64,000 bases of DNA from Chlorokybus atmophyticus (lineage: Eukaryota; Plantae; Mesostigma and Chlorokybus algae), in assembly GCA_009103225.1 (NCBI GenBank), contig RHPI01001428.1, forward strand, positions 432,158 through 496,157, given 5' to 3'. Both the position numbers and the translations under genes were made by a program. This document shows positions 5,929 to 51,400 of the stretch, in pieces (position 1 is the first letter of the stretch; each line of letters opens with the position of its first letter). Under the pieces are notes generated by a model. The model did not search any database. It saw only the letters and a program-made list of their open reading frames with translations, and was not told the origin of the DNA.

Positions 5929-8900
5929 ATGCAGACCAGCGGAGGCAGCACCGCCGTCGGCGGGGAAGCGATGGAGGAGGTGCGTGGCAGCGCAGGCGGA
6001 GGTGACGCTGCCGAGGAGCTCCGTGATGGCAGGGAGGAGGCTGTCATGGTTGAGCAGCGGGGAGATCACTCCGCCGTTTGCCGCTGGACTCTTGCTGGGT
6101 TTTCCAGGGTGAAGGCCCGAGCGCTATGGAGCCGCTACTTTGCAGTCGGAGGCTACGACTGCCGGTATGGTCAACACAACACATGTCAGATGGATTGGGT
6201 GTGCCTGGACGATGCATCTTATGCAATTCAAGCGTAAAGTGTTGTCGACTGAACTCAGCATAGTACACGCTCAACGTGCTTGTGCAAAGCGATCAATGTT
6301 CTTAATTGCGTGCATGCAACCTCACGACAGAATAGGGTTGTTTATTCTTGCAACCCTTTCATGTCAGGTTAACTGTCTCCCATATTACAATAGAAAGGAC
6401 GCTCTGTGGTTGCCGCAATTGTCCGCTTGCAAACAGCACAGTTTGTTCTCAACATACCCGTAGCAACGCCTAATTGGTGATCAAGCTCTGCACTAGCTAT
6501 CATCATGTGCATGTTGCTAATGGATGTTTGTTGGTGCGCAGTCAGTGCATGTTTCAATTCAGTTGCATGATCTGAGCTTGCATGCCATGCTTGAGACGCA
6601 TAGGCAATGTTGATTGTTCTTGGACTGTCCTGTGATGTGTTTCTTAGAACAGCAGTAAGTATGTTGTAGGTGTTTGCATGTGACGCAGTACGACTTGACA
6701 GGTCGCTAGAGGTGTTGCCATCCAAGCTGATTAATGAGAACTCACCAGCACTGCTCTTTTTTTGTCCACTGTCAACTCGTAGCTCACTTTGTGCACAATA
6801 TGACATGCTGCACGACACCCTGGTACAAGGTCGTGGAAACTAATGCATGGACACCACACTTTGCGTTGCGCAGTATTGAGTGCCAAACACGAGTAATGGC
6901 ATTGTGGGTCTGGTACACGTTTCCTACGGTTATGTAATGATGGTCGGCTGCAGGTTGCTGGTGTATCCGCGCGGTGATTCCCAGGCATTGCCGGGGTATC
7001 TTTCAGTATACCTACAAGTAACCGATCCTCGAGGCGCTTCTGCTAAGTGGGATTGTTTTGCCAGCTACCGCCTGTGCATAGTCAACCAGAGAGATGATAG
7101 CAAGTCAATACAGCGGGACAGTTGGCACAGATTTTCGGGAAAAAAGAAATCACATGGGTGGTGCGACTTCACTCCGGCTTCAGCATTGCTGGATGCACGC
7201 TCTGGGTTTCTTGTGAACGATGGGCTGCTGATTACCGCGGAGATATTGCTGTTGCACGAGTCTATTCAGTTTTCTCGTGAACCTGAACCATCAAGCAGCG
7301 GCTTAGGAGTTGCGACCAGCAACACAGTACCCAGTGAGTCCTTGGGTGGCAAGTTTACATGGCGCGTCCACAATTTACCACTGTTTAAGGAGATGATCAA
7401 GACGCAGAAGATCATGAGCCCAGTATTTCCTGCAGGCGAATGTAATCTTCGGCTGAGCGTCTATCAGTCCTCCGTGTCATCTGTGGAGTACCTCTCAATG
7501 TGTTTGGAAAGCAAGGATACGGATAAGTCATCACAAGTCTCTGCCAATGGTAGTGCCAATGAGCGGAGCTGTTGGTGCCTGTTCCGAATGTCGGTTCTGA
7601 ACCAGGTGCGTTTTGGTGCTTGTTGCGTTTAGTAGTCTACTGAATACAGCGTTCACTTGCTGGTCTCTAATCAATACAGCCTTGTGCATCAGAAAGCGTT
7701 TCAGCTTATTATCTATGCGCTACTGACTAACGGACTTTGCTAGGGTGGAAAGAACCACATGCATCGAGATTCGTATGGCCGGTTTGCCGCTGACAACAAG
7801 AGTGGTGACAACACCAGTTTGGGCTGGAACGACTACATGAAGATGTCAGACTTCCTGGCAGCTGAGTCCGGTTATTTGGCGGAAGACGGTACAGCTGTGT
7901 TTTGCGCTTCCTTCCATATTATAAGGGAGCATAGCAGCACGTCAAAGACACTAAGTGGCCACATTCCACGAGCACCAACATCCAAGAAGCATGGCGGCGA
8001 GATTTATCAGGGCAAGTTTGTGTGGCGCATTGATAACTTCACTAAGTTGAAGGACTTGCTGAAGAAGCGCAAGATTACTGGTCTCTGCATTAAAAGCAGA
8101 AGGTTTCAAGTTGGTGGCAGAGACTGTAGGCTGATTGTGTACCCACGAGGGCAGTCACAGCCACCTTGCCATCTCTCCATGTTTCTGGAGGTAACAGATC
8201 CGCGCGCATCGGAGAAAGAGTGGAGCTGTTTTGTGAGTCATAAGCTGTCCGTGGTTAACCAAAAGGCCGAAGAGCGATCTGTCAGCAAAGAGTCTCAGAA
8301 CAGATACTCCAAAGCTGCGAAAGACTGGGGCTGGCGCGAGTTCGTCACACTGACCAGTCTCTTTGATCAAGATGCGGGTTTTCTGGTCAACGACGCCTGT
8401 GTTTTCTCAGCAGAAGTACTAATACTGAAGGAAACTGCAGAAGTTCTGACCCTCAAGGACACAAGCGCCTTTGGGGAGCAGTGCTTCACCTGGCGTGTTG
8501 AGAACTTCATGGCCTTTAAGGACATCATGGAAACCCGCAAAATTTTCAGCAAGTACTTCCTGGCTGCTGGCTCTTGTGAGCTGCGCATTGGTGTATATGA
8601 GTCCTTTGACACGCTCTGCATCTATTTGGAAAGCGACGGCAATGCCGGACTTCCGGACAATCAGCTGGACAAGAACTACTGGGTGCGATACCGCATTGCT
8701 GTGGTCAACCAGCGGCATCCAGAGCGGACTGCTTGGAAGGAGTCCTCTATCTGCACGCGCACGTGGAACAACAGCGTTTTGCAATTTATGAAGGTGTCAG
8801 ACCTGTTGGAAGCAGACGCTGGCTTCCTTGTTCGTGACACAGTGGTGTTCACGTGTGAGGTGCTGGATTGCTGCCCATGGTTCGACTTTGCAGATCTGGA

Positions 8901-11900
8901 TGGGCTCGCGGGGTCTTCTGACGATGAGCCAGACGTGCTTAGCACTGACCCTGAGGAGTTGCTGGATGATGACAGTGAGGAAGACGACAGTGAGGATGAC
9001 CTGCATGAGGACCTCAATGAGCCTCAGGAGATTTTCCGCAGCTTGCTGGCACGGGCTGGGTTCAGTCTCGGAGGTTACAGTGGGGAACAGGATGGTGCAC
9101 CTGCTTTGTTGGACCCATCACAGCTGCAGGCTGCTTTGCGTGAGCGGTTGCTGATGGACGCTGGCGCTGTAGCAGCTTTCCTTGCAGGCTTGCGTGTGTA
9201 TCTGGATGACCCAGCTCGCGTACGGCGGCTGCTTCTTCCAACTGTCACGCCAAGCAGATCTGGTAGCGGCCTGCATCTGTCAGAGGAGGACGATGATGAG
9301 CTGCCACTGGACGTGGAGGAAGACACTTCGCCAAGTGTTATGCACTTGTTGATGGGCGTTAAGGTTCTGCAGCAGGCTATAGTTGACCTGCTTCTCGACA
9401 TTATGTTAGAGTGTTGTACAAAGCGCACAGCCCCGGCAGCAGAGGATGCAAGGTCCCCTAGCGCATCCAGCCAAGCAACCAGAGAGCACCCTCAAGCACG
9501 CGTACGCAGTAGCAGTACCACCAGCACGCATGATTATTGCGACGCAGCACGCATCAGTCGCAACAGTGACACCTGCAGCAGTAGCAACGATGCAATGCGC
9601 TCCGATGCCACCAGCCTGCCCTACCTGCCCACAGGCGTGGATTGCATGCGAGTACGTGGCGATGCGTCTGCTGTCACAAGCTCAACTTCTAATGCACTTC
9701 CTCCGCCATTGCCACCGCCACCACCAGCCCGCTCATCACAGTCACACAGCATGGCACCTGGTGGTGATCACTTGCATTCTCCATCTGGCAAGGTGAGTCT
9801 GTTGTCAGCCTGCTTTCTGGATGCTTGTTTGGTCATACCACGAGCGGTACCATTTCACATTGCTGCACCATGTTCAGCAATCGTGTTGGCCAGCTTGATT
9901 GTTTGTGATGTCGGGCGGTCTGGAAAATCGCTATGCCCAGCTTGTGTATCTCAACTGAGTGGTTGTATGCACTGCAGACGCTGCCACGTTGGCCTGAACA
10001 ACCAGATGAGTTGTTGGGGTTGATAGTCGATTCCCTGAGAGCATTGGACAACGGGGTAGCACCCATGCCCTCTGCAGTTGGCTGCTCTGAGCCCCGGCGA
10101 CGGCCTCAATCAGCCAGCAAAGTTGCAGCCATTCTCGCCAGTGCGCCTACACACCTGCAAAGGGACATTGCTGCCTTGGTGCCTAAACTGGTGGACCCGC
10201 TGGAGCATCCAGCCGTAGCCGGCGCCTTGCTAGAGCGGATGCATGCAGCTTCTCCTGGCGACTTGCCGCTGCGCATGACACTGCTGTGCTCCCTAGCACA
10301 GCTGCATCTGCCACCAGGTCCGCTGCCCGGCTTCTCCCAGGGTGCCGGTGCAGACACCATTGCGCTAACAACAGCTTTGGAGGTTCTTCCTTGGTACGAG
10401 TCAGAGGCGGAGCTTGCAGCTGTCATTGCCTTGCTGCTGCGTGCTGCAGCTGCCGCCGACCGCAGCACACGCACCGCGATGGTGCGCGCTGTTCGCACAC
10501 AGCTCAAGAGAACAGGTGGTTCCGTAAGAGTCCTTGCAGTTGTTGGCTTCGCCTTGTGCACGCCACCTTGGGAAGTCGCACAAGCCATGCTCAGGGAGAT
10601 TGAGGCTGATGGGTCAGCATTGGAGAATGAGCAAGAACAGGATTTGAATAGCCACAGGTTTGAGAGGGTGTCGGACGTGGCCATGCTTCTGGATCTGATG
10701 GCTGCGGATGCTGCACCGCCCCATACCCAACGCGAAGCAGAGCGTGTGTTTGAGGCTGCTGTTGCACATGGTGGTCTGGATGAGCAGACGATTGTAATGG
10801 TGCTGGAACGGCGCAGGGCACAGCATCAACATCATTACCAGCACATTCATCAGCAGTACCATCAACTCCAGGACTACGACTTTCCAGCTGTGTTGCGGTT
10901 GGCAGAGGTTCTGGCGCAATCTGTTGAGCCTCGAGTGCGTGAGTTTGTGCGCAGCCTGTATGTGGTGCTCTTCAAGCTGTACAGCAGTGATGCATGTCGC
11001 GACCGGATCCTTCATGGTTTGGTGGACAAGGTCACGCGCTGTTTGGAAGGAGCTGCAACTCCTCAACAGCTGCAGATGCTGCACAATGAAGCTGAGCTGG
11101 GCATGGAGATCCTCGCCTTCCTTGTGCAAGATGAGGATGGCATAGCAGGGCCTGTTCTAGCGTTGATGCGTGAGGCTGTGCAGGGAGCACTTCTTAGCAG
11201 GGATGCCCTAGCGCAGACACTAGCAGCAACAGCAGATGCACTGGCTCATACTCGGGCGGATGCCTCTGTGAATATCCAGCGCCTGACGCGAGAAGCAGCT
11301 TCCATATCTCTGCACGTTTCTGAAGCCGAAGCCAATGTTGCAAGATTGAAGGTATGTACACGCCCATTTGCACATGCAGGCATTACAGCTGGCATGACAG
11401 TGCATCTGAATGCAACTGTGTGTTGCTTGCAGGCGGAGAACAAAACTCTGCTGGATACTGCGGCACGAGAGCGGCGAGAAGCTTCAGAACGCATCAGGGA
11501 CATGGACGGGCAACTAGAGTGGGTGCGAGCGGAAAGAGAGGAGGAAGCCGCCAAATCGGCAAAAGCGCTGCGTGAGGTTACGCAACGGCTGCGAGAAGCC
11601 GAGACACAGCTTGCCCAATTAAAGAACCGCAAGCGCGAAGAGCTTAAACGCGTCATGAAGGAGAAGCACGTGCTCGCTGAGCGTCTAAAATCCGCAGAAG
11701 CTGCTCGCAAAAGGTTTGACGAGGAGTTGAAGCGGTTTGCATCTGAGAATGTGGGTCGTGAGGAGGTTCGGCTCAGCCTGGAGAATGAGGTCAGGCGCCT
11801 GAGGGACGAAGTTGGCCAAAGCGAAGGCGGCCTGCGTGAGAAAGAGCAGCAAGTTCAGCGATGCGAGGCCTACATTGACGGCATGGAGTCCAAGCTGCAT

Positions 11901-19830: not shown

Positions 19831-19905
19831 GAGAGGCCAGCGCCTTGGTTGGACTCACGGTAGACAAGCAGCACTAGGGCGAGGGGTGAGGGAAGGGGGG
19901 GGGCG

Positions 19906-20112
19906 NNNNNNNNNNNNNNNNNNNNNNNNNNNNNNNNNNNNNNNNNNNNNNNNNNNNNNNNNNNNNNNNNNNNNNNNNNNNNNNNNNNNNNNNNNNNNNN
20001 NNNNNNNNNNNNNNNNNNNNNNNNNNNNNNNNNNNNNNNNNNNNNNNNNNNNNNNNNNNNNNNNNNNNNNNNNNNNNNNNNNNNNNNNNNNNNNNNNNNN
20101 NNNNNNNNNNNN
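19906..20112. other. assembly gap (N run)
   Basis: 207 N, flanked by G runs. Confidence 0.99.
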
Positions 20113-20740
20113 GGGGGGGGGGGGGGGGGGGGGTATATGCGGCACTGTGCTTGTGCAAATGGCGCAGCTATGGTGGCCGCCACGCCTTATTCATCTTGTG
20201 CAAAATATTGCAGGGCCTGCCACGCTTTGAGATCATCATGCATAACACTCAAAGCACGTCGCAAACCCCAAAATAAATGGCAATAGGCAAGACAGGCAAG
20301 ACAAGCATGCAGTCATATGATTACATGGGGGCCAAGGCAGAGCTATGCACAGCTTACTTATATGCGGAGAAAGTGTTATATGCGATTCAGAGAACACGCA
20401 CTTGAAGTGCAACACATTTGTAAAAGAGAGCAAAGCTCATGTGCACAAACAGCTGCGACGACCTCGTTGTCGCAATGAAAGCAACATCCCGTCAGGATTA
20501 AGATATCTCTTATGATGTACAACCCAGCTCTAGTTATTGGTACTGTGCCCTGCTATCCTTGGCAAACTACCACAACCTTACCTGTCATCAAATATCACAC
20601 TGTTCCTACCAACCCAGTACAAACAACATCAACCGGGGGTTGGTTCACACCATCAGCAACAGGCACAGCTATCCGCTTGGCCTGGCAGGTTGGGCGATTC
20701 TGTAATTGGGGAGCATCTAGCATCACGACCAGGAAGCCAG

Positions 20741-23700
20741 CTAGCCAGTGTTGCGCATGTTGCTGGCGATGGCCTTGATAGATCTCAGCAGCGGCATTTC
20801 CCACTGTTGTCGCTCGGCCTCCTCTAGAGTCATGTCGCGACGCCTGCCCAGGAGGATGACCTGGATGTGGTTCAACGGGTCAAGGTAGCGGTTACGAGAG
20901 TCGAGGGACTGCTCAAGGGCAGGGTTGTCTTCGAGTAGACTGCTGAGCTGCGTAACCATCAGCAGCTGCGACTTGGTGCGGAGGTACTCCTCCTTCATGA
21001 GATCAAACACCAGCTGCTGCGTGATGCGGTCCTTGCAGAGGCGCGCATACTCGCGACAGATCTCCATGTCCGCCTTGTACAGGGACATCTGCACGTTGCT
21101 CAGGAAGTTGCGGAAGAAAGGCCAGTCGCGGTACATCTTCTGGAGCTCGAGGATGCGGTCCGGGTTGTTCTCGGTGTAGCCGAGGATGGCGCTACCCACG
21201 CCATACCACGCGGGGATAACTGCGCGACTCTGGGCCCAGCCAAAAACCCACGGGATAGCTCTCAGCGAAGACTTGTCGCGCACAGCAGCCTTTCTGCGGG
21301 CTGGACGGCTGCCGATGTTCATGAGGCCAATCTCCTCAACAACTGTTGCTTCATAGAAAAAGTCATAAAAGCCCTCTGTTTGGTCGGTAAGCTCTCGGTA
21401 CGCCTTCTCTCCAGCAGCGGCCATGTGCTTGAGAATCTCCATGTGCGCAGGGTTGTCCTCAGACAGCAACTGCGTCTGCTTCAAACTGGCCTTCAGCAGG
21501 GCAGTAACGCCTACAGTCAACTCATAGACGGCGGTCTCAGCATTGCCGTATCGGTAGGTGATGACTTCTCCCTGCTCAGTGAACTTGATGGTACCGTCCA
21601 CGCTGCCCGGGGGTTGACCCATGATGCTCTGATGCGTGGGTCCGGCGCCGCGACCAAACGTGCCGCCTCGACCATGGAAGATGCGGGGCCGCAGTCCCTC
21701 TTCTTTGCACAGTGCCATGATCACCTGCTGAGCCTGGTACAGGCTGGTGGCGCTGCTGATGATGCCGCCGTCTTTACATGAGTCTGAGTACCCAAGCATG
21801 ACCTCCTGTACATTACCCACAGCCGCAAGGTATTTGCGATATGTGCCGTTGTTCATCAACAGACGAAGGGCCCTGGGCATCGCCGCCAAGTCGGGGATGG
21901 TCTCGAAAAGTGGCGTCACATGGTATTGGGCGTAGAACGTGCCGTCCTCTCGCACACCCAGCAAGTTGCGTGCAACGAGCCAGGACAGGAACAGCACTTC
22001 CATGACATTGCTGGCCTGCTTGGTCATGGAGATGACATACGACGCAACCGCCTCTCGCCCGATAATCTCCAAGTTGTTACCGACGCTCACAAAGGTGTTG
22101 AGCACAAGCCTTGTGGACTCGCTGACGGATGCCAGGATCTGTTCCACGCGTTCGCGCGACAGAGGCGACATCTCAATCTGCTCAGCAAGCAATTCAAGGC
22201 GTTCATCATCTGACAAGTCAGCGTAATTGTCGCAGACGCCCAGCTGCTCAGAGCTCAACAACTCTGCAACAGCCTCGCTGTGTGTCGTGGACTCCTGCCT
22301 GATATCAAGCGCCATGAGATGGAAGCCGAAGGTCTCCCCGAGCCGCAGCAGATCATTGACCTTAGTGAGGGCAAGGCGATAGTTGTTATCTGCAATCAGG
22401 GATTCCCGGATGGCACGCAGGTCCCTAAGGAACTCTGAAACAGACTCGTATGCATTCTCTTTTGGGTCCAGACCGGGAATGTCATCAAGGTTGAACTCAA
22501 TGTCCACCAGAATGTCCTCCCGCGCAAAGGACTGCTGAGCCGCTATCAACTTCAGCTGGTTGTTCACAATGCGGATCATCTGCTCTAGCCGGTGTCGCAT
22601 CACGCGCAGCTTCTTGCGGTACGGCTCTGTGGCGAACAGATCCGGATCTTGTTGGAAGGCTGGGATATTCTTGATGATCTCCTCATCTCCTGACAAGCTA
22701 TCCATCAGGATGGAACTCACGGGGCTGATGAGGCTGGAGTGCGTGAGCACGTTTGTGGCTGCGCGCACGCGGCGGATGTACTCTGCAAGGATGAGACGGC
22801 TCTGTAGCAAGGCCGCAAGCTCGGTTGTTTCAGGTGTGACATACGGATTGCCGTCGCGATCTCCACCAATCCATGACCCAAACTGAATAAAGCTGGGCAC
22901 GGTGACAGGCACGCCGTTGTTCAGCGCCTTCAACTCTTCGCCATACACGCGCATGAGACTGCTATCAGCGTAGGCGTACGTTGTGCACACGGCATCGAAT
23001 AAACTGAGTCTGAAGTAGTTCAACCCCGTCTGGATCTCCTCAACAACTGTTGGCCGTCTGGACCGCATCTCATCTGTCTTCCACAGAATCTCAACCTCTC
23101 CTCTGATTGCCTCAACCACGCCCTGGCGTGCCACCTCGCTCAACCGAGGGTCTTCCCGCTTCTCGGTGAACTCAAATATGCGGTGCAGACACTGCAGTAT
23201 GACGCGACGCCTTGCTTCTGTTGGATGGGCTGTAAAGACTGGCATGTACTGCACGCCAAGGCAAGTAAGCAGACGCACCGAATGCTACCTGTGGCATATG
23301 TGTACCAATCAAGTGTGCGCTACTGATACAAATCAGTTGCATACCTCTGCTTTTCCAAACAGAGTCACAATATCTTCGGCCTTCACCCCCTTTGACTTCA
23401 TTCGGCGGTATGTGTCGTCAAAGGAAGCATACCAGAGCGGATCCGTAACATTGCTGTCGCGCACCTGTAGAGAGTTCTTGGTGTTAATCTATGCGCCTTA
23501 CAGCCAGCCAGCTGTTTGCCAACATAAATGCAAGGGTGCACTTGCAGAAAGTGTTCTCACCTGCTGCCTCCGCTTTCGATGCAAGTAGGACTCTTCAGCA
23601 ATGTTCAACAACGATGAATAGCAGTAGAACGAGCGCACCACGGCAGTGATCTGCAGATTATTAAAATAAACGTAAGGACATACAACAAACAAACCTGCAT

Positions 23701-25868
23701 GGCCAGCGGCGAAACAGTACTAGTAGTAGTACCGACAGCAACTATGACAACGTATTTACAATAATAATGATAGGCCTAATATAGCTGTCAACAATGTACA
23801 ACGTAACTAGTAATCACAGCAACACCAGCCATTATCATACTCATACCAAGACACACCACTACAACGAAGGAACTGTAATTGCCAACCAGCAACACTGAAT
23901 CCGCTGGTGTTGGTTCTACTGGCAGCGCCAACAAAGTATCTACATTGAACCACCCCCGAAACGGCAGCTGCCCCAAACCTTGTGTACATGTTGTGTTACA
24001 GTTCTCAGCACGTGGTAAAAGGTAACAGACCATGCACGCAAGCAGCACAGGCACAGTATGCGGGCACAAAGCTGGCACACATGACTGCAACTGCATGCAG
24101 GACAGCTTGACTGAGCTGTACCGTATCAACATCCATCTTCTCAATGAAGCGCAGCAGCGATGCTCGCGCTCGAGGGTCTTCCTGCTGTCGCATAGAAGCA
24201 AACCCATCCCGCAAATGCATCACCTTCGCAAGACAACGTCATCAGCCAGCCTGCTTTATGTTGACAGAAATGGTTGGAACTTCTGTTTTGCAATGTGCAA
24301 TGTGCAAAGTGGCCAACACAAAGCTCCTACAGTACCCGGCTGTGCAAAGTGGCAAACATAAGCCCACCTTGTCCAACAACCCTTCAGGTCCGTGTTCTGC
24401 AATCACGTCATCCAAGATCTGAGCCAAGAAAGCTTTCTGCGGAACGGAACCAATCAAGTTGTGAGAAGCAGCCTATACACAAAAGAAAATCATGAACTGC
24501 TAGCGTGTGAGGAATCTGCACTCGTACAAGGCTACATGTTGATATGCATTGTGAGAACCATGAACTCCAACTCCTGTGGAATGAAGCCTACAGATGCTAT
24601 CACATGGAAAACCACTTAGCACCACAAGTACCTGGTCCTCAAGCTCCTCGTCTACGTCAATCACATTGGCTGCTTGATGCGCGAGGCCAACAGAGGACCG
24701 CAACTCATCCCTTATGCGAGGCCATTCGTTCTCATCAATCTGCTTGCCCTTATCTGCGACGAGAAAGATGTCCACAACGCGGTCGCCTTCTGTCCTAATC
24801 TCTGCGTTGAGCACTCTGCCGTATGGGAAACACCAGCAGGTTAGCAAAACGACATGTCCAAAGGGAAGCACCCAGTACTCAATTCGATAGAATAACCATC
24901 TTGGGTTGGTCACCAAGCATAACCCACAGCCCATGCGTACGTGAGGTTCAAACTTGTAAAAGCTTGCGTGACATCGCGGAGAAGGTTGGCCTGGTCTGCG
25001 GCTTGTATGGTCACGACTGTTCCCTTTTTTACACTGCTGTTGTCAAACTGCACAACAAACTGTCCGGGAGCTGACACAGTGGAAGTGGTCGCTCCATCTG
25101 TCACGATCACGTCTGTGTCGTTCAACACTGCCGGCGTCCTGTCTGAAGCAACACACTGCACTGGCACCCTGCCAACCACAGTAATATTCTCACTGCAAGC
25201 CAGAGAAGCGTCATTCAGTTCACTGTCAGTAGGCTTCAAGCATCATACCTTTGGACTCGGCTCTGTTGCTGAGTGCATGGCCATCGACAACACTGCTCGA
25301 CGGTTGTGGGTTTCCCTCGCAAGCCACCCCGAATGGCGCTGGAGGCCTGACAACCAAACATTACCTGATTGACATGGATTGCCAGCTGCAGACGACTAGC
25401 AAGCAGCACACGACACAGGCATGCAGGTTTTGCACATGACACACCTGCTTTGCAGGCTTGGAGGGCCCCGCAGACACGCCTGGAGTTTGCAGGGCGAGTC
25501 TGCAGGAAACCGAGATTGGTTGCTTGCAACCAAAGCATTCTCCCTTGCTTGCAATGCAGACCAGGGGCAACCGTGCATGCAAGTTTGCTTGAAGGCGTGT
25601 CGTGTGTCTTTGGTGGCACACACAATTCTTTCACCAGGTCACTCAAGAGGCATTTTGGTTGTGCAATGCTGAATTGACAGACAACACGCAAGCAGTTGTG
25701 TGTTGTCGACCAATTGCGAATTGTCATGACTACACGACAAACTACTTGTAATTCCACAGAAGTTTTTTGTGTACAAAGGAACGTGCCAGCATAGCTACTC
25801 CCTCAACACCATGTTGGCAGCTGCAGTGGGACAACGTACCTTGAGACAGAGCAGATGGATGCAGCCAT
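20741..25868 (-). CDS. ppc: phosphoenolpyruvate carboxylase, bacterial-type core, with an N-terminal transit-peptide-like leader and an ACT domain (1180 aa)
   Basis: Ten exons, all GT-AG and phase-compatible: 25868-25840, 25499-25445, 25346-25249, 25192-24941, 24815-24632, 24472-24368, 24223-24122, 23650-23561, 23464-23345, 23248-20741 (3543 nt). An in-frame TGA lies 12 codons upstream of the ATG. Motifs: VFTAHPTE, GSWIGGDRDGNP, QEVMLGYSDSCKDGG, FHGRGGTFGRG, LRAIPWVF, C-terminal RNTG. Confidence 0.95.
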
Positions 25869-26739
25869 CCCGGAAGAACGCGTTCCCAGCTCAGTGAGCT
25901 GTCACGAGGCACTCTTAGCAAGAACGCAGGTATGTGCAGTGCCGCAGGCAACAGCCATGAATATGAAATTGAGCTTGCAGCTGTTCAACAGACATGTCAG
26001 CCGAAACTTCCAACTGACACCCTACACCGTGCTTGATGCAGTGCATTGCTCAGGACTTCAAGCGCAACGTCAGGGCGCAAGCCATTGACAACAGCAGAAT
26101 ACATGTTGCATGGTGAAACAACTCCCAGCTGGAGTGACTTAGACCCGCTGACCAGAGCATGGACAAGAAGAATCGTGCCACAAGCCGCAAGGGGCCGCCC
26201 GGCAATTACATGCAAATCTACAACTTGACCGCACCTCAGCAAGCTGACAGCACGCGCCTCAGCAGCAATACGTCCGCAGCAAGCCTCTCCGCAAGGAAGC
26301 GCGAGCTACCGCCGGCTTCGCCGCATGCCATACAGACCGCCAGCTGGCAATGTAGGCCTCCGCTGGAGCAAAGTCTGCCGCCAGACGTTTACTCTCGTCC
26401 GGATGCCGTAACTCGGTGTCGCTCTCGGCAGCGATGCCCAAGCGCGTGTTGGTGAAAGCGAATTGCATGGCGCGATCAACCTTGATGCGCTTTTCGAGTT
26501 ACAATGGAGCTACGAGTTACGTGTCAAGAGCCGGCCCAGAGCCGTAACCTCCTCGCGGCCGCTGGTGGCTCGCGGTGTTGAGAGAGGTCGTCGAGGGAAT
26601 CATGCGCGCACGGACAATTCTGCCAGCTGGCACCGGACAGAATCCTTTAAGTGGCTCATCACCTGATGAAGCTGATGCATTCATCAGCTTCATCAGGTGA
26701 TGAGGCTTTGTTTTTTTCATTCACACCAACACCTTGGCT

Positions 26740-30166: not shown

Positions 30167-33100
30167 CTACAACTGCCCAGTTACCTCTGCACAGGCTCTT
30201 GGTCAGATACAACATAATTGAGTGCAACACATCAGCATGCAACCAAGGCCATGAAGAGGTATCGGGGAGCACTCACATGCACAGCACGTGGCGTGTGACC
30301 TTGAACAGAAGGCTTACCAGGGTACATTAGTGGTAGCTGAGAGATGGCTCCATTGACATCAACAATGCTGGCAGGCTTCGCAGGATGCGGCCAATGCGCG
30401 CGCAACATACCAAACACTTGCGTGTTCTGCCTCTGTACTTGCCGTGCTGTTTGTAAAAAAGCCTGTGTTGCCTGTTCAAGAGGCAAGTTTGAAACATATG
30501 TACAGAATGCATAGCTTACGCGGCTATGCCATGCTACTGTTCAGACGCGTTATGCCAGTTGCACAGGAGGAAGTCATCACCTCATCAAGTGGCACAGTGT
30601 TGCGAGTGGCCTCTTCAACCCTCAACACATGGTACGAGAAGTCGAACAGCTCAAACATGCCTTGCTGGTCCAGTAGATGCATGGCGACACAGCCAAACCA
30701 CTGGAAGCCATCACCGAACCAATCCTGGTTGGTTGGACTGCCAGCAGCAGGTCCCGAACAGTATACCTGCATGAAGTGGGCCAGTGAGTGGTGAGCCACA
30801 CGATCACAATGTGGCAAGAAGTGAGGAGACTTACAAACTGCAAGGCGCTCCACAGCCGATGAAAAGCCCTTGAGCCATACGTGTCCGTGATTTGGCTTAA
30901 TGATGCCGGTGGTGCCCATGTGGTGCGCACCGCAGCCAGCTGCTTATGCGTGTGGTGGAGCACAGCGCACAACAAAGAACTAGACTGCGCTGCTGCCTCA
31001 TATACACTGCCTGCAATGGACGTCAACTGACTATGTCCCTTGCATCCAAGAGTGTAAACACAGCAATGATGCCTGCATGTGATAAGCTTTACCTGCAGAT
31101 GCCACTGTGGAGCTCAGGTTGCCAGCAGTGTTATGTACAGTGCTGTATGAACTGGCAGCCAGGGACTGCAAAGGTTCTCCGCCTGTGCGCCTGATGCCAT
31201 CCTCAGTGCAAGAGATGCCAAACAGGGAGGCGTTCTGGATGAATGTACTGAGCTCTTCGGTTCGCTGCAAGACACACGATACTCATCAGCTACCATCCAC
31301 GACAGTCGCTGCTCACACTACATCATTGTATGTTACGTACCGCGACTGAGTCCAGCAGAGCAAATAATGCCAGCAGGTTGCCCATCTCCCTCAAGCATTG
31401 CATGACTTCAGTGTATAACGCTGGATACTCTAGCAAGTGCTGGAGCTGAGCTTGGAAGTAGCCAATGCAGCCAACAACACCATAATCGTAAAGAGGGAGA
31501 AAAACGTTCTGTGGCATGCCTGCATGTGACATGGACTTCACTTCAAAGCCAAAGTGTCTGCAATGCATGCAAGCACAACTTGCAGTTGACTGCAGATACC
31601 GGTATGGTCACCTGTCATAAGCTCCGAAGCATATGGCACAAAGTACTGCAGCTGGTTGTCAAGATGGGTGAGAAGTTCCTGGCAGAGCCAAGTGAGGTTC
31701 CCATCTTTGATCAGGCTGATGCACGCTTCCAAGTGACTCGCGCCAAAGTGCTGCGATTGCAGCTCCGCCCATCGGTGAAAGACAGCATTCAACGAGCGGC
31801 TACCATATAGGAAAGACGGCTTCGGGAGTTGTGGAGGTGCTGGTCTATGAGAGAGGTCCACCGGCTGGCGCACTCCTGGCACGAAGCGCTGCGTAGTAGC
31901 ATTGTAGATGAAGTTAGGCAAGATGTCGCTGCAAAGCTCCTGCACCACCTGCAAGAATACACACTGTCAAGATTGAAAAGCATGGTTGAGGTGATGATGC
32001 TGATCAACATCAGCTGTATTGATGGATACTGAGGAAAACAGCAGTCACACAATCAAAGCACAGCAATAAATTGGGCAAAAGACATGCTGATGACAAGACC
32101 AAACCGCGCGATGGGTTTTGCAAAGGTACCTGCGTTGCTAAGCGTCCTGCAGCATCGGCCATCACTTCAGATAAGGGGTCTCTAGTTTCAGACATGAGGG
32201 CGTCCCAGCTGTCTAAGGGCAGGTCTTGTAGCAGCTGCTTGTGTGCTGCATGCAGCGCTCGCAGGAGGCTTTGCAACTCTAAAACGCTTGTCAAACTGCC
32301 AGCCTCGAACCTTTCGATGATGTACTCCACATTGTTACAAAACAAGCGGTTCAGCCTGTGTGTGAGCAGGCTCGACATATCAATGGACCTGCCCAACAGG
32401 TCAAACCGCTGATGAATAAGCGCAGCGTAGCGCTTGGGTGCCAATGAAAGTTTCACAACGCTTTCTACCTGTGCGCAACAGCAAGAATGCAATCTCAGAA
32501 AGGATTTGTCTCAGAAGTTATGTCCACAAGAACACGTAAGACAGGATTACCTGACCCCGGAACTCATCATCGAGCTGCGCATGGGCGGCGTGCATCTTGG
32601 CATGAGTGAACATATGCTCGCTGAGCTTGAAGATCAGCTGCTCAAAGCAGAGGTCAACCTCCGCCTCCACTTCATCATACAAGAACCGCTGTTGCAGGTC
32701 AGTGAGCGCGCGGTCGGAGGCATCGTTGTAGATGTCAAACAACAGCAAGGTGTGCTCCACCAATGAAGGATCACCGGATGTGATGACATGGTCTATCAGA
32801 AGCCATGGCAGCGACATGTGGATGGGAAACTGGATGGTGTTCTCTATATCCAGGTAGAACTCCCTATACCACAGGTTGGACAAGTCCGAGGATGCTTGCA
32901 CGATGGCTTGATAGTCCAGGACAGGCTCAAAGAAGAAAGACATGTGATAGAAGTCCTCCAGCTTCCTGAGCTTGTTGGTGGAGAACTCCTTGATTTCAAA
33001 GAAGCCTGTTTTCTGGTTGGCGGCACCAGCCAGCAGCTCAGAGAGCAAATGTTGTATGCACTGCAGCTGCGCTTGTGTTGGCGCGCATGCACGTGCATTG

Positions 33101-36100
33101 AATGAGTATGGATCTCCGGACTTGGCCTTCTTTGTCAACTCTGGCGGCTCTGCTTTCTGCAACCAGTCCGCTGAGCTGGCTCGCATGGACAGGAGCATGC
33201 TGCAAACAATCACTGTCATTAGTGACTTGGTGTAGCATGCTCCACATGCATAGTCAAGTAGTGTCTCAAAACGTGCTGAGATGTGAACTCCTGTGCATGC
33301 ATAATGTAGGGACACGATGCGTAGGCAGATTCATCAGTACCAGTGGATCTCTCGTTTCTTTTTCTTTCCTATACTTCGTATCATGTTGGCCAAGGTGTTC
33401 TGTAAGAACTGCTGCTCCTCTTGATGTACCGCCTATCAACGCAGCATGATAAGCATAAGTAACAGCAGCCAACGTCAATCAACTGTCTATACCTGCTGTA
33501 ATATTGGCTGCAGAAAAGTGGATGACCGCAACATTAGAGCAGACACGCCTTTAATGAACCCGATGACTTCCGTGAGAGCCTTTTTCTCTGCAGGCTGATA
33601 GTTGTACCGAATGACTCTTTCATAGATGGTTGCGTTAGCCGGAACCGTGTATTCTGTTGAGCCGGTTCCCTCTGCGGTTGTGGCAGCTGGTCTTGCATAT
33701 TTCCAGGCGCACTGCTCAATCACTCGGCCGGACCAATCATTCAGCAAACCAATGCCCTCCAACACCTGCAGGCCCAAAACCACTCCACTGTGACAACGTT
33801 GCTTCCAACCTCAGAGCAGCTGCACAATGATTGAATGAACTTACCACAGCAAACACTGTGGTCGCATCTTCAACAGATACATCTTGGCCGGAGCTCTGTG
33901 CAGCCTCAGCGCGCGCACTAACAGCCCCAAAGCGTGCCACAAAGTCGTCATGGGCTTGCGACAGATTGAGCATGTGAGGCAGGAGCTCATAGTTTCGTGC
34001 ACACTCTGCTAGAGCTGAATCATTCATCTCGGAAACCGCTGCTGCATCAAGCTTTCCTTCCTTCTGCAGCTTGACAAAGAAGGGCGAAAGCGGCAGCAAG
34101 GTTGCGGGCGCCATGTGCATATCCGCATACACAGCAATAGCAGGGTTCTTCCTCACAACCCTGCCATATATACGCCAAGCGCTGTTGGCTCTGTGCATGC
34201 ACCATCAGTGCGCACAGTAGTGCCTAGCACAAGTGTAGCTTACCTGAGATACTTCTCCAACTTCAACTTTCTGGTCTTTATGACTTGCTCTGCATCACGC
34301 TCCCTAGTGCAGAAGTAATATTAGTGAGACTGTGGGTATGCTTGGACTGCATTCCAACTTGACTACTTTGTGTGCCGACCTTGGTAGCAACAGCACCAGC
34401 AGCAATGGCAAGCATCTCAGCAGCATGTGGCGCTGTTGATACAGCAGGGCGCGTCCTGTCTCCAGCATCTCCATGCAGAAGCCCAGTAAGATAGCGATGG
34501 CCTCTTCACAGCTGCCCACAATATAGGTTGGTGACTGGGTCATGTGATGACAGGTTCTGGCTGAGTGCAATTCTTGTGGTCACATACGTGGTAACCCTGT
34601 CGACCTCTGTTTGGAGGTTGTGCAGTATACTCCAGCGGTCAATGAGGAAGAAATGTAGCTGGTTCAGTGCTTCTGCGAGCTCATCCCCACCTGAGACCTT
34701 GCACAACTGTTCAGAGGGCACACCAGGAATCTATGAATCTGTGCAATGGTTGAAAAGAGCCAATGCTTGTAGCTCAGCAACGCATCACAAGTCAAATGGA
34801 CAAGCCTACCTGTAACGTGCTGAGTGGTGCGCTTGTACCACGAGAAGTCGTTCACTAAACTTGTGCGCAAGTTCTTCATTACATCCAGCCGGATCAGCGT
34901 GTCCAATGTTGCCAACACCGTCATGAGGTGCTTTGGCGAGGCCGTGAGAAGGCGCCTGGTGGCAGACCATCTGTCAGTCCCGGCTGCTGCCAGGATACTA
35001 GAACATGCTTGCATACTTGTCCGGACGGCCGAGCTGTTTCAGGCTGCTGCACACTTGTGTGGTGGCATCCTCTTTGAACAGGTTCAAGTCGCTCAAGCAA
35101 CGCATATCTGCATCCAGCACCTGGCAGCAAGTAGAATGATCAGGGAACATCTGGCAAGCGCCATGAAGACAACATCACTACAGCATGATACACGGCAAAC
35201 ACGGCAGCCTACCTGAAAGGTTGTGCTGTACATCTCTTGCTGCTGAGCCGCATTCATACTGTCCATCTGCGGCAGATGTCATGACTTACAGCTGCGTTGC
35301 CAACCAGAAGGTGGAGAAATTGTTTTGCTGAGTCCAATAGCTGTATACTTACTTGTGGGATGGCTCTTGAACAGCTGCGATGCGTGTAAAGGGTGGCCAG
35401 CAGGGATGTTCCCTGCTTAATGCATTGCTCCTGCTCTCCACCACCGTCAGTACCACCACACCATCTAGCTGCATCACACAACGTTGGCCATGTCACATAC
35501 CAGCTTGACAATTGCCGCTGCATCCTCGAGAAGCAGTGGCGTGCTATAAGCTGCAAGGTCACCAAACTCTGCCAGCAGACAACTTTGTAAGATTGACTGC
35601 TTGCAGCGAAACCTATTACTCACGTAGCGCAGCATGCTCAAAGCTTACCGTAGTCATCACCATGAATGCCTGTCTGAAGTTCAACAGGCAGGGCAGTGAG
35701 CGAGTCAAAGTCCTGTTTATACAAAGACGTCAACTGCATGCAATTGACAGGCTCAACACGGTTACAGGGCTACTGCATGTAATTCAGGAATTCATTGCAA
35801 GTGTACAAGCGTGAAACTTGCCAAGAACTGCTTCAAACAAACTGAGTGGCCATGCAGCACTCCGAAGGATTTGAAGGATCGATTACCTGAGCGACTTGGA
35901 CAGAAGACAGTTGGGCCAGTGGGTCTGGCGCCCTGTTTGCAACAGCAGCTGCCGACATAATGAGCAGCCAAGTTCACCTACCAATGATTGTCTACCCCAC
36001 GTAGGCTTAACAGAACAACCTAATTCAGTTGAACTACGCTAGGATACAGCTGCAAAGTTGAGACAACAGTGACATTCACCATCTAACAATCAACCGTATT

Positions 36101-48463: not shown

Positions 48464-51400
48464 TTACGTGACATCCTTGCGAGCACGAGCGAGAGCAGCG
48501 AAGGCGCCGTTCGGCCTTGAAATGAGTTCCTCGTGCGTGCCCTCCTCAATGATGACGCCGCGCTGTACAACGGCTATGCGGTTGCAGTGTCTGATTGTTG
48601 ACAAGCGATGCGCCACAACCACTGTAGTGCGCCCAACCATGAGACGGTCAAGAGCCTGCCATTGAAATGAGCGTCATTACCAACGACGGAGGTGTATACT
48701 ACTGTGGAAAACAGTGATATAGTAAGCGTATTTCTCAGTGCCTCACCTCCTGAACAATGGCCTCTGACTCTGTGTCCAATGCTGAAGTTGCTTCGTCCAA
48801 GAGTAATATGCGAGGGTCTTTGATGACAGCACGTGCTATGGCAATTCTGATTTACCACAGAGTCAGCCCCTGTTTACACGGCAGTTCAACCAGGAGGCTA
48901 CTGCAGTGTTATTACCTTTGTTTCTGGCCACCGGACATCTGAACACCCCTCTCACCGACCTGGCAACAACAACCACGTTGAGAAGGAAAGCAGTAAACTA
49001 CCATACAGAACTGTTTCAGACAAGTGAGGGGCTTACATGGGTGTCATAGCCGTTGGGCAGGCGCGAGATGAAGTCATGCGCATTCGCAGCCCTTGAAGCT
49101 GCCTCCACCTCGTGCTGAGTGGCGTCCTCCCTTCCATACAAGATGTTTTGCCGAATGGTTGTAGCAAACAACACGGGCTCCTGAACGAAAACAAAAGAGT
49201 TGTGAGAGCGGATGCGGGAAGGAAGTGACAGAGGCATGAGAAGCTTACGGATCTGCCTTGTAATCTGACCTGAGAGACAAGCCCAATGTTCATGCGCAGC
49301 CAACGCAGGTTGAAGGTCTTTATGTTCACACCATCAAGGAGGACTTCACCATCAACGGGGTCGTAGAAGCGCTCCACCAGGCTAACGACGGTAGACTTAC
49401 CTGACCCGGATTCTCCGACCAGAGCGATCGACTCGCCGGCCTTAACCGACAGCGATAGGTTGCGGAAGACAATCGCGTTGGGCCGGGATGGGTAGACAAA
49501 GGTGACGTTCTTGAGGTCGATGTTGCCTTGGATGTGGGGTAATTTGACTCCGTTGGGGTCATCCATGTCCATGGCGGGCTGACGATCAACAATGTCAAAC
49601 GTGCTCTCCATAGCAGCTTGACCCTGAGAAAACGCAAAACGAGTACGGTAAGCATCTGCTCGTAATCAGTCCTGGTTGCTTCTTTCCTATTGCCATCCAC
49701 ACTACCAAGGTCGTTAATCACTGCTGTTACCAGTACCATGAAAAATGTTCATCTACTAGTATTGATATCAACTACGTCACGCTAATAGCAGTAGTAGCAT
49801 CATTGATGTTATGGACAACAATACGGTACCTTGGCGACATCTGGTGCAAGCTGGGAGGCCTCTCCGACGCCGAGGGCGCTGAAGATGATGGCGAAGAACG
49901 TGCGCAGCACCTCATCAAATGTCATGTGGCACTGCTTGGCCATAATGCCTCCAAACCAGAACGCAAGCGAATACGCAGAGTACATCATGAACTGGCTGTA
50001 GCCAAAACCGATGCCAGAGACGTGAGATCTGCGTCTGCCGAGCTGCACAAGTTTGGTTGACATTAGCAAAAGCCAAATGGACACCATGCACACAACACAT
50101 GCACACTTGCACTACGTATAGAGTTTACCTGGGTGGGCTTCTTCAGCTGCTCCGAGTACAACTCCAGCATCTTATCCTCTGCACCGAATGCTGCCACAGT
50201 ACGGATGTTGCCCACAGCTTCGCTTGCAACCTGCACAGATTGTTTGTCAACCCGCGTACGCTCATGCATAAGCGTCATTGCATGCTGATTGGAACACGCA
50301 CCCCGTTGGCCTTCTCCTGTAGTTTCTGCGCTTCACCAGTGAAGCCCTTGAAGAACTCCATCTGCAGGTAGCCTCCAATGGCAATGAGGGGGAAGATCGC
50401 GAGCACCACCAGGGCAAGCCGCCAGCCCGTTATAAAGGCGATGATGATACCGGCAATCAATGTTGTGACGTTCTGCACGAACAAACCCAGCCTGTCGCCA
50501 AGCACCGCCTTGACCAGGGCAGCGTCGGACTCCAACCGTCCCGTGATACCTCCACTGGAGTTGCTGCAAGATTATACAAACACACAGATGCATGAACATT
50601 GCCTCCCAGTCATGCACTTTCACATGAGCTGCCAACATTACAAACCAGTTGGCTTACTTGTCACTATCAAACCAGGCGACTTCCTGGCGCAGAACAGCTT
50701 TGAAGGCTAACTCTCGGATTCGGCGCGTCAAGTAGCTGCCGCTGGTGATGAAGCCCCACAATTGCCAGAAGTTGGCGTTGAACGACGCCACCGCAATCAC
50801 AACAAACATGAGCGACCAGAAGCGCGCATCGTCCGCCAGCTGATTGGGAGGTTCATAGAAAACTGTGATGATCTGGGCAAAAACAATTGCAAACGCCGGG
50901 TATATGCAGCCGTTCAGACCGGCCGCAGCAGCACCCAGAGCGGTGCGCCACCACTCTGGCTCACTCATCTTCACTACTCTCCAGGCTGAGACAGGAGCGT
51001 ACTTCTTCTTCTTCTTCTCCTCCTCTACCCCGTCAGCTTTCTGTCATAATGGTGGATCAGTCTTCCACAACACACAAGAAGATACAGTATCTCAGTGATT
51101 GTCCATGTGCAAACCTGCTTTTTGAAGCGAGCGAAGAAGCCCTTCTTCTGTGGTACTGTTGCACCTGTTTACATCAACTGATCAGTGTTTGTCATGGAGG
51201 TTGGTAAACACCATGCATCACGTAATGGTGCATATGCAAAGACTGCGGTCTAATGGTGCTCACCCATACCCTTAACAGGATCTTCAAGTTCTGGTTCCAC
51301 GGCTTGCGCAGAGTTGCGCCGCACAATGCCGGTACTGTGCAACTGTTGGGAACCAGATTCAGACACACGTTTTATCAGCCCGCGCGAGTCCAGTTCAGCC

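What the first reader, a model, noticed from the sequence alone, without database searches (positions are those of the whole stretch)
25150..25868. Plastid-like transit peptide on the PEPC, assembled from four small exons
Seen: MAASICSVSRLALQTPGVSAGPSKPAKQASSAIRGGLRGKPTTVEQCCRWPCTQQQSRVQSENITVVGRVPVQCVAS. It starts MAAS, is rich in Ser/Ala/Thr/Arg, has only two acidic residues and ends in a V-x-C-V-A cleavage-like motif; an in-frame upstream stop fixes the start. Known: PEPC is normally cytosolic in green plants, and plastid PEPC is a rare exception. Inference: stromal HCO3- fixation, either for N assimilation or as part of a carbon-concentrating route.
Basis: partly seen in the sequence, partly recalled or inferred. 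Interest (0 to 1): 0.7.

Follow-up and report, generated by a model that had tools for sequence, protein, structure and literature searches.

The report
Transit-peptide-like leader on algal PEP carboxylase
The PEP carboxylase gene of this streptophyte alga (Chlorokybus) really does start with a transcribed, disordered, targeting-peptide-like leader of about 65 to 95 residues that most likely sends the enzyme to the chloroplast, but one exon boundary was misread and the location remains a prediction.

Summary
The window is Chlorokybus DNA. The gene is the public model Chlat1/4695 (P0001, 1160 aa).

Two details of the observation are wrong:
The true join reads ...SRVQ-R-VPVQCVAS.
A different in-frame TGA (26259-26261) in the upstream non-coding exon does the same job.

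Residues 1-93 are predicted disordered and match no Pfam family. An ACT domain starts near residue 98 and the PEPC core near 199. There is no Met between 1 and 223.

Orthologues from Mesostigma, Spirogloea, mosses, liverworts and a lycophyte all carry unconserved 100-165 aa leaders. Most begin MA, with net charge 0 to +1 and 3-7 Ser/Thr in the first 20 residues. That is plastid-type rather than mitochondrial-type. The moss orthologue is on published TargetP2 and WoLF PSORT plastid-predicted lists but in no experimental proteome list.

The "VxCVA" cleavage motif carries no statistical weight.

Verdict: a real presequence. Plastid targeting is probable (about 0.6) but unproven. Other first-reader notes on this same window cover the ACT fusion. 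Nothing was found on other DNA.

The parts
26235..26334 (-). Non-coding first exon (5'UTR; the true 5' end may lie further upstream). It contains an in-frame TGA at 26259-26261 and two short upstream ORFs (ATG at 26331, 31 codons; ATG at 26326, 6 codons).
   Evidence: First 100 nt of transcript contig X1, joint 26235|25898. Translations. ATG contexts.
25899..26234 (-). 5'UTR intron (336 nt, GT..AG).
   Evidence: Joint 25898->26235 in X1. A matching loose end in X3. Stop seen.
25840..25898 (-). Exon holding 30 nt of 5'UTR and the start codon (ATG 25868-25866, context GGGATGG). Encodes MAASICSVS plus 2 nt.
25445..25499 (-). Coding exon 2 (55 nt). Completes R10 and encodes residues 11-28.
25249..25346 (-). 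Coding exon 3 (98 nt). Encodes residues 29-60 plus 2 nt of R61.
25169..25248 (-). Intron 3.
   Evidence: Joint 25249|25168 in X1 and X3. P0001 lacks these residues.
25153..25168 (-). Start of coding exon 4: last base of R61 and VPVQC (residues 62-66). This is the end of the basic, acid-poor part of the leader. The cleavage point is not determined.
25060..25152 (-). Residues 67-97: disordered Ser/Thr- and Asp-rich linker (29% S+T, 4 acidic, 1 basic) between the basic leader and the ACT domain.
   Evidence: Composition. pLDDT below 50 up to residue 93.
24668..25059 (-). ACT domain, residues about 98-186. It is split by the intron 24816-24940 (exon 4 ends at 24941, exon 5 starts at 24815).
   Evidence: Pfam ACT-type hits at residues 100-177. 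AF2 beta-alpha-beta-beta-alpha fold over residues 99-186 with pLDDT about 90. Joints.
20741..24436 (-). PEPC core, residues 199-1160 plus the stop codon. Five exons, the last being 23248-20741. The protein ends in RNTG.
   Evidence: PF00311 E=1e-245. Exon map. C-terminus.

Best explanation
The first 65 to 95 residues of this ACT-domain PEP carboxylase are a cleavable N-terminal organelle-targeting presequence, most probably a chloroplast (stromal) transit peptide.

Proposed layout:
- Exons 1-3 and the first bases of exon 4 encode a basic, acid-poor, Pro/Gly-rich, unstructured leader (residues 1 to about 66).
- A short acidic, hydroxylated linker follows (67-97).
- The folded protein begins with the ACT domain (about 98-186), followed by a PEPC core whose closest relatives are gammaproteobacterial.

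Proposed mechanism, which is inferred and not shown: the precursor is made in the cytosol, recognised by the plastid import apparatus through the uncharged, Ser/Thr-bearing N-terminus, imported and trimmed. PEP carboxylation to oxaloacetate would then occur in the stroma under control of the ACT domain.

The same layout (variable leader + ACT + PEPC) is shared by orthologues from Mesostigma to mosses, liverworts and a lycophyte. The targeting would therefore be an old property of this PEPC clade, not a Chlorokybus peculiarity.
For: Shown here:
1. The leader is in the mRNA. Contig X1 has 0 mismatches, and every exon translates into P0001. A second Chlorokybus strain, X3, has the same joints with no indels.
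2. The leader must be translated. An in-frame TGA lies 18 codons upstream in the spliced 5'UTR with no ATG between. The ATG context is good, GGGATGG. The next Met is residue 223, inside the PEPC core, so the ACT domain cannot be made without the leader.
3. Residues 1-93 have pLDDT below 50 and no secondary structure. The ACT fold starts at residue 99. No Pfam family matches residues 1-99.
4. Composition of residues 1-66 is 9 K+R against 1 D+E, with 17% Pro+Gly. The first 20 residues start MA, have net charge +1 and five Ser/Thr, and the first acidic residue is at position 45. The helical hydrophobic moment of the first 20 residues is low (0.22-0.26). The only high window (22-39) holds five Pro/Gly. 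There is no hydrophobic core for an ER signal.
5. Orthologues carry unconserved 100-165 aa leaders before a conserved ACT domain. Bacterial relatives start directly at the PEPC core.
6. Of the 13 named streptophyte models (Chlorokybus, Mesostigma, two Spirogloea, Physcomitrium, two Ceratodon, Sphagnum, two Marchantia, Calypogeia, Riccia, Diphasiastrum), 10 have net charge 0 or +1 with 3-7 Ser/Thr in the first 20 residues. The others are one Spirogloea model with net +3, one with only two Ser/Thr, and Riccia with none.

From the literature:
- A charge of +4 or +5 in the first 20 residues is needed for mitochondrial import in Marchantia and Chlamydomonas. Replacing K/R by Ser redirects a Marchantia mitochondrial protein to plastids (PMC12531127).
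- The Physcomitrium orthologue LOC112289779 (P0122) is listed among TargetP2 chloroplast/thylakoid-predicted proteins and WoLF PSORT plastid-predicted proteins (PMC11581415, S8 and S2 Data).
- A chloroplast PEPC has a precedent in rice Osppc4 and wheat Tappc4 (PMC9358456).
Against: - There is no experimental localisation for any member of this clade. The moss orthologue does not occur in the held (stored-cut) text of the supplement files that list the experimental plastid and mitochondrial proteomes.
- In algae the first-20-residue features of plastid and mitochondrial peptides overlap (PMC12531127), and predictor reliability falls off outside angiosperms (PMC11581415).
- Ser+Thr over residues 1-66 is only 18%, and five Cys within residues 1-66 is unusual.
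- The cleavage motif has no statistical weight, so neither cleavage nor its site is supported.
- The Pterosperma orthologue has an acidic N-terminus (net -5), and two unnamed algal relatives have net +3 or +4. Plastid-type leaders are therefore not universal in the wider family.
- I could not run TargetP, PredAlgo or any trained predictor on the Chlorokybus protein itself.
Confidence: 0.6

Rival explanations
1. The leader is a mitochondrial presequence, or a dual plastid and mitochondrial one, so that oxaloacetate is made in the matrix next to the TCA cycle.
For: The net charge of residues 1-66 is positive (9 basic against 1 acidic). One window (22-39) has a helical moment of 0.58, which 2.7% of shuffles reach. 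Algal plastid and mitochondrial peptides overlap in simple features (PMC12531127). Two unnamed algal relatives have net +3 or +4 in their first 20 residues. From my own knowledge, not checked here: diatoms have a mitochondrial PEPC isoform.
Against: The first 20 residues have net charge of only +1 and a low moment (0.22-0.26). The high-moment window contains five Pro/Gly, and AF2 predicts no helix anywhere in residues 1-93. Mitochondrial import in Marchantia and Chlamydomonas needed +4 or +5 in the first 20 residues (PMC12531127). The moss orthologue sits on plastid-predicted lists, and no occurrence was found in the mitochondrial lists as far as those files are stored.
Confidence: 0.15
2. The leader is not cleaved and is not a targeting signal. 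It would be a disordered N-terminal extension of a cytosolic enzyme, for example a regulatory or phosphorylated tail, or a spacer for the ACT domain.
For: Plant PEPCs are typically cytosolic and use a disordered N-terminus for regulation. The Pterosperma orthologue has an acidic, non-targeting-like N-terminus. The moss orthologue is absent from experimental organelle proteome lists. Disorder alone does not prove targeting.
Against: A regulatory tail would be expected to keep some motif, yet nothing before the ACT domain is conserved across orthologues. The plant-type phosphorylation motif is absent. The strong charge asymmetry, with acidic residues avoided for the first 44 residues, recurs in Mesostigma and several bryophytes despite no sequence similarity. 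That recurrence is the signature of targeting peptides.
Confidence: 0.2
3. The leader is an annotation or assembly artefact: a wrong start or wrong first exons.
For: The 5' end of the transcript is not fixed, because contig X1 simply stops at 26334. Two upstream ATGs lie in the 5'UTR. In strain X3 the in-frame TGA at 26259-26261 reads TGG (loose end).
Against: Two independent transcript assemblies give identical junctions. Both upstream ORFs stop before the main ATG and are out of frame. There is no alternative ATG before residue 223. Orthologues in more than ten genera have equivalent leaders.
Confidence: 0.03

Closest known systems
Rice Osppc4 (and wheat Tappc4), the chloroplast-targeted PEPC of grasses
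   Same: A PEP carboxylase carrying an N-terminal plastid transit peptide, an exception to the cytosolic rule (PMC9358456).
   Different: Osppc4 is a plant-type PEPC of about 1000 aa without an ACT domain, and its localisation was shown experimentally. The present protein ends in RNTG, lacks the plant-type phosphorylation motif, has an ACT domain, and finds gammaproteobacterial PEPCs (about 50% identity) as its nearest non-eukaryotic relatives. Its localisation is only predicted.
Uncharacterised ACT-PEPC orthologues of other green plants (Mesostigma Mv09723, Spirogloea, Physcomitrium LOC112289779, Marchantia MARPO_0030s0078, Sphagnum, Ceratodon, Diphasiastrum)
   Same: Same architecture of variable leader + ACT + PEPC, with 54-62% identity in the core. 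The leaders are of plastid type.
   Different: The leaders share no sequence and differ in length (about 100-165 aa). None has been studied: no paper was found under their accessions or under 'ACT domain' + PEPC.
Bacterial PEPC of sulfur-oxidising gammaproteobacteria (e.g. Thiohalobacter, Sulfurivermis)
   Same: Closest non-eukaryotic sequences to the catalytic core (48-50% identity over 99% of the large exon).
   Different: They are 917-1002 aa with no ACT domain and no N-terminal leader. The alignment starts at the PEPC core.
Chlamydomonas PEPC1/PEPC2
   Same: PEPCs of a green alga.
   Different: Reported as cytoplasmic complexes (PMC11548211). No relationship to the present clade was tested here.

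Membership tests
Chloroplast (stromal) transit peptide | N-terminal position, translated as part of the precursor | tested here: met
   The ATG at 25868 is the first in-frame ATG after a TGA in the spliced 5'UTR. The next Met is residue 223. The mRNA junctions are confirmed.
Chloroplast (stromal) transit peptide | Few acidic residues, net positive charge, hydroxylated residues, uncharged start (often MA-) | tested here: met
   Residues 1-66 have 9 K+R against 1 D+E. The first 20 residues read MAASICSVSR..., with net +1 and five S/T. The first acidic residue is at 45. S+T over residues 1-66 is a modest 18%.
Chloroplast (stromal) transit peptide | No stable structure and no sequence conservation among orthologues | tested here: met
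   pLDDT is below 50 with no helix or strand in residues 1-93. No conserved column precedes the ACT domain in alignment A1.
Chloroplast (stromal) transit peptide | Stromal processing site (V/I)-x-(A/C) followed by A | tested here: inconclusive
   The strict motif is absent. The loose motif occurs 3 times against 2.3 expected by chance.
Chloroplast (stromal) transit peptide | Import into plastids and removal of the peptide | not testable with these tools
   Only indirect support: the moss orthologue is on TargetP2 and WoLF PSORT plastid-predicted lists and in no experimental list.
Mitochondrial presequence | Amphipathic, strongly positive helix at the extreme N-terminus (+3 or more in the first 20 residues) | tested here: not met
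   Net charge +1 and moment 0.22-0.26 in the first 20 residues. AF2 predicts no helix. The criterion comes from PMC12531127.
ER signal peptide | Hydrophobic core of 7-15 residues near the N-terminus | tested here: not met
   No hydrophobic run of 5 or more residues. The best 10-residue window has mean hydropathy 1.37 and contains an Arg.
Plant-type PEPC (the family of rice Osppc4) | N-terminal Ser phosphorylation motif (SIDAQ-type) and C-terminal QNTG | tested here: not met
   No SIDAQ motif. The C-terminus is RNTG.
Plant bacterial-type PEPC (AtPPC4-like) | RNTG C-terminus and clade membership with plant BTPCs | tested here: inconclusive
   RNTG is present. No phylogeny with BTPC sequences was made. 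The nearest listed relatives outside the ACT-PEPC clade are gammaproteobacterial.

The most novel reading that the evidence does not exclude
An ancient, so far unstudied clade of plastid-targeted PEP carboxylases regulated by an ACT domain. It has a core like that of gammaproteobacterial PEPCs. Among the best hits listed it was seen from early streptophyte algae through bryophytes to a lycophyte, and not in seed plants. If so, stromal PEP carboxylation, feeding plastid aspartate-family amino-acid synthesis, a malate valve or a biochemical CO2 pump, would be an ancestral trait of the green lineage rather than a grass oddity.
Probability: 0.45. Interest if true: 0.6.

Novelty: new variant of a known kind. 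Interest (0 to 1): 0.42.

Why it matters
PEPC is treated as a cytosolic enzyme. The one well-known plastid form (rice Osppc4) is a recent plant-type derivative.

If this older ACT-PEPC clade is stromal, the carbon-nitrogen wiring of plastids in algae and bryophytes would include direct oxaloacetate synthesis under amino-acid-type (ACT) control. Its apparent loss in seed plants would then be an evolutionary event worth explaining.

The claim is directly testable with a reporter fusion in Marchantia or Physcomitrium.

The transit peptide itself is an ordinary kind of feature, and the gene model is already public.

Tried and rejected
- Pfam on single exons gave only sub-threshold ACT hits, because the domain is split by an intron. 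This was resolved by using P0001:1-200.
- Literature searches found nothing on this clade. I searched for an ACT-PEPC, for plastid PEPC in algae or bryophytes, and for the orthologues' accessions.
- A9SLH0 in PMC3521007 appears in a list that I read as the other, archaeal-type PEPC family.
- The Physcomitrella N-terminome supplements and the plastid/mitochondrial atlas supplements do not mention the protein.
- The Mueller 2014 moss organelle proteome paper is not held.
- The ESM Atlas search with residues 1-97 gave only scores below 0.8, to ACT-protein clusters, which is not usable.
- I looked in the window for marker organellar genes to calibrate Chlorokybus transit peptides. I found only MATH, CYFIP-like and ABC pieces, so no in-genome calibration was possible.
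- The bacterial promoter/terminator scan is irrelevant for a eukaryote. It only revealed a palindrome.
- No trained localisation predictor is available in these tools.
- Joined step left out: I did not concatenate exons into a typed or built sequence for any search. Exons were translated one by one by reference and matched to the stored protein P0001, which then served as the reference for the spliced product.

Full report
**Identity of the locus.** The large minus-strand ORF 20741-23278 is a PEP carboxylase (PF00311, E=1e-245). Its best database match, at 99% identity, is the public model jgi/Chlat1/4695 (Chrsp3S05624) of Chlorokybus, 1160 aa, held here as P0001. The window is therefore Chlorokybus nuclear DNA, and the gene is already annotated.

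**Checking the observation.** One search for public runs found four holders in two studies. When laid on 20700-26400:
- Run X1 gave a single 3829-nt contig with no mismatches that skips ten GT..AG introns, so it is a spliced transcript.
- Run X3 (95-99% identical, evidently another Chlorokybus strain or species) has matching joints, some placed 1 to 4 nt differently. It shows no insertions or deletions.
- The weak run X2 supports three of the joints.

The coding exons (high to low coordinate) are 25868-25840, 25499-25445, 25346-25249, 25168-24941, 24815-24632, 24436-24365, 24220-24122, 23650-23558, 23461-23345 and 23248-20741. I translated each exon separately in its phase, and each is found at the expected place in P0001. 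The lengths sum to 3483 nt, which is 1160 codons plus the stop. I did not build a joined sequence myself. P0001 is the stored reference for the spliced product.

1. The acceptor of the fourth coding exon is at 25168, not 25192. The unused AG is in frame, so contigs cannot exclude a minor isoform.
2. The transcript has a 5'UTR intron (25899-26234) and a non-coding first exon (26235 to at least 26334). The in-frame stop that "fixed the start" (25902-25904) is spliced out.

The start is still fixed:
- The upstream exon has an in-frame TGA at 26259-26261, and no ATG follows it before 25868.
- The ATG context is good, GGGATGG.
- The two upstream ATGs are out of frame and their ORFs end before the main ATG.
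- The next Met in the protein is residue 223, within the PEPC core. The conserved ACT domain therefore cannot be made unless the leader is translated.

**Anatomy of the N-terminus.** An AlphaFold2 model of residues 1-330, built with 20 aligned relatives, gives pLDDT below 50 and no secondary structure for residues 1-93. A confident beta-alpha-beta-beta-alpha fold follows over residues 99-186, then the helices of the PEPC core. Pfam finds ACT-type domains at residues 100-177 and nothing in 1-99.

| Region | Composition |
|---|---|
| Residues 1-66 | 9 basic, 1 acidic, 17% Pro+Gly, 18% Ser+Thr, five Cys |
| Residues 67-97 | Acidic and Ser/Thr-rich linker |
| First 20 residues | Start MA, net charge +1, five Ser/Thr |

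The helical hydrophobic moment is low (0.22-0.26) over the first 20 residues. Its single peak (0.58, residues 22-39) lies in a stretch with five Pro/Gly. There is no hydrophobic core that could serve as an ER signal.

The "V-x-C-V-A" site carries no weight. The loose motif is expected 2.3 times by chance in this composition, and the strict motif is absent.

**Relatives.** The word-based protein search and cluster look-up show an orthologous group of 1130-1215 aa proteins at 54-62% identity in the core. Members include Mesostigma, Spirogloea, Physcomitrium (LOC112289779), Ceratodon, Sphagnum, Marchantia (MARPO_0030s0078), Calypogeia, Riccia and the lycophyte Diphasiastrum. More distant algal members include Pterosperma. 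No seed-plant or fern member appears among the listed best hits, but only the best 120 of 8000 capped candidates were shown.

The next hits are gammaproteobacterial PEPCs at 48-50% identity. They lack both the ACT domain and the leader.

In the alignment of N-termini, conservation begins exactly at the ACT domain. Before it, the sequences are unalignable and 47-164 residues long. Two ACT-bearing models have essentially no leader: one (P0016) has a longer cluster member (P0149), and the other (P0021) may likewise be a truncated model.

Despite sharing no sequence similarity, 10 of the 13 named streptophyte models have net charge 0 or +1 and 3-7 Ser/Thr in the first 20 residues. Exceptions:
- One Spirogloea model has net +3, and the other has only two Ser/Thr.
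- Riccia has no Ser/Thr in its first 20 residues, and Diphasiastrum, like Riccia, has an acidic residue within its first six residues. The starts of both models look doubtful.
- Pterosperma has an acidic N-terminus (net -5).
- Two unnamed algal sequences have net +3 or +4.

**Bearing of the literature.**
- PEPC is regarded as cytosolic. The known chloroplast form is rice Osppc4 (also wheat Tappc4), a plant-type enzyme (PMC9358456). Chlamydomonas PEPCs are reported as cytoplasmic (PMC11548211).
- Raval et al. 2025 (PMC12531127) show experimentally that +4 or +5 in the first 20 residues is needed for mitochondrial import in Marchantia and Chlamydomonas. Replacing those charges by Ser sends a Marchantia mitochondrial protein to plastids. 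By that rule the Marchantia, moss and Chlorokybus leaders are plastid-type.
- The same paper finds that these features overlap in algae. PMC11581415 shows that predictors degrade outside angiosperms.
- That paper's source data list the moss orthologue ppp:112289779 among TargetP2 chloroplast/thylakoid predictions (S8 Data) and WoLF PSORT plastid predictions (S2 Data). It does not appear in the held text of those files, which also carry the experimental plastid and mitochondrial lists.
- I found no paper on this ACT-PEPC clade.

**Interpretation.** The leader has the properties that define a cleavable targeting peptide: position, obligatory translation, disorder, charge asymmetry, and no conservation alongside recurrent composition. 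Its N-terminal 20 residues fit plastid rather than mitochondrial import.

| Reading | Confidence |
|---|---|
| Chloroplast transit peptide | about 0.6 |
| Mitochondrial or dual presequence | 0.15 |
| Uncleaved disordered extension of a cytosolic enzyme | 0.2 |
| Artefact | about 0.03 |

Import, cleavage and any physiological role (N assimilation, aspartate-family synthesis, malate valve, CO2 concentration) are inferred, not shown.

**Novelty and score.** A transit peptide is an ordinary feature, and the gene model is public. What is not in the searchable literature is that a whole ACT-PEPC clade distinct from Osppc4 carries plastid-type leaders from early streptophyte algae to a lycophyte. That makes this a new variant of a known kind (plastid PEPC). 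It is moderately interesting and easily testable. Other first-reader notes on this same window (s1-190552, s1-190766) concern the ACT fusion and the proteobacterial-like core. Nothing comparable was reported from other DNA.

Noticed in passing
window 26235-26334 (-): The 5'UTR exon carries two upstream ATGs. One opens a 31-codon ORF that ends 1 nt before the exon's 3' end. The other opens a 6-codon ORF (MRRSRR). Both are out of frame with the PEPC ORF, so they may affect its translation.
   Followed up: partly
window 26259-26261 (-), compared with run X3: In the second Chlorokybus strain or species (X3), the loose end of the contig reads CCA where this genome has TCA on the + strand. The in-frame TGA of the 5'UTR exon is therefore TGG there. 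Whether that strain has a longer ORF upstream could not be seen (only 25 letters).
   Followed up: no
window 25169-25194 (-): An in-frame alternative acceptor AG lies 24 nt upstream of the one used. No contig uses it. Raw reads would be needed to see a minor isoform.
   Followed up: partly
window 26656-26703: A 48-nt inverted repeat with a 20-bp stem, about 320 nt upstream of the known 5' end of the PEPC transcript. It sits at the edge of an AT-rich stretch (about 26.7-29.5 kb, GC about 0.44).
   Followed up: no
window about 19900-20100: A run of N (an assembly gap) flanked by proline-codon repeats, a few hundred bases beyond the 3' end of the PEPC gene.
   Followed up: no
window 24668-25059 (-), P0001 residues 98-186: An ACT domain is fused in front of the PEPC core and conserved across the orthologous clade. 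The ESM Atlas neighbours of the N-terminal part were about 290-aa ACR-type ACT proteins, but at scores below 0.8.
   Followed up: partly
P0001 residues 47-66: Four cysteines within 20 residues (CC..C......C) at the end of the leader, which is unusual for a transit peptide. Not seen in orthologues.
   Followed up: no
window 6880-10023 (+), 32518-33315 (-), 49033-49611 (-): Other gene pieces in the window: two MATH-domain ORFs, a CYFIP/FragX_IP-family exon and an ABC-transporter ATPase fragment.
   Followed up: no
P0147/P0148 (Pterosperma): The prasinophyte member of the ACT-PEPC family has an acidic, non-targeting-like N-terminus (net -5 in the first 20 residues), with no upstream Met in a longer transcript. 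The family may therefore not be organellar in all green algae.
   Followed up: no
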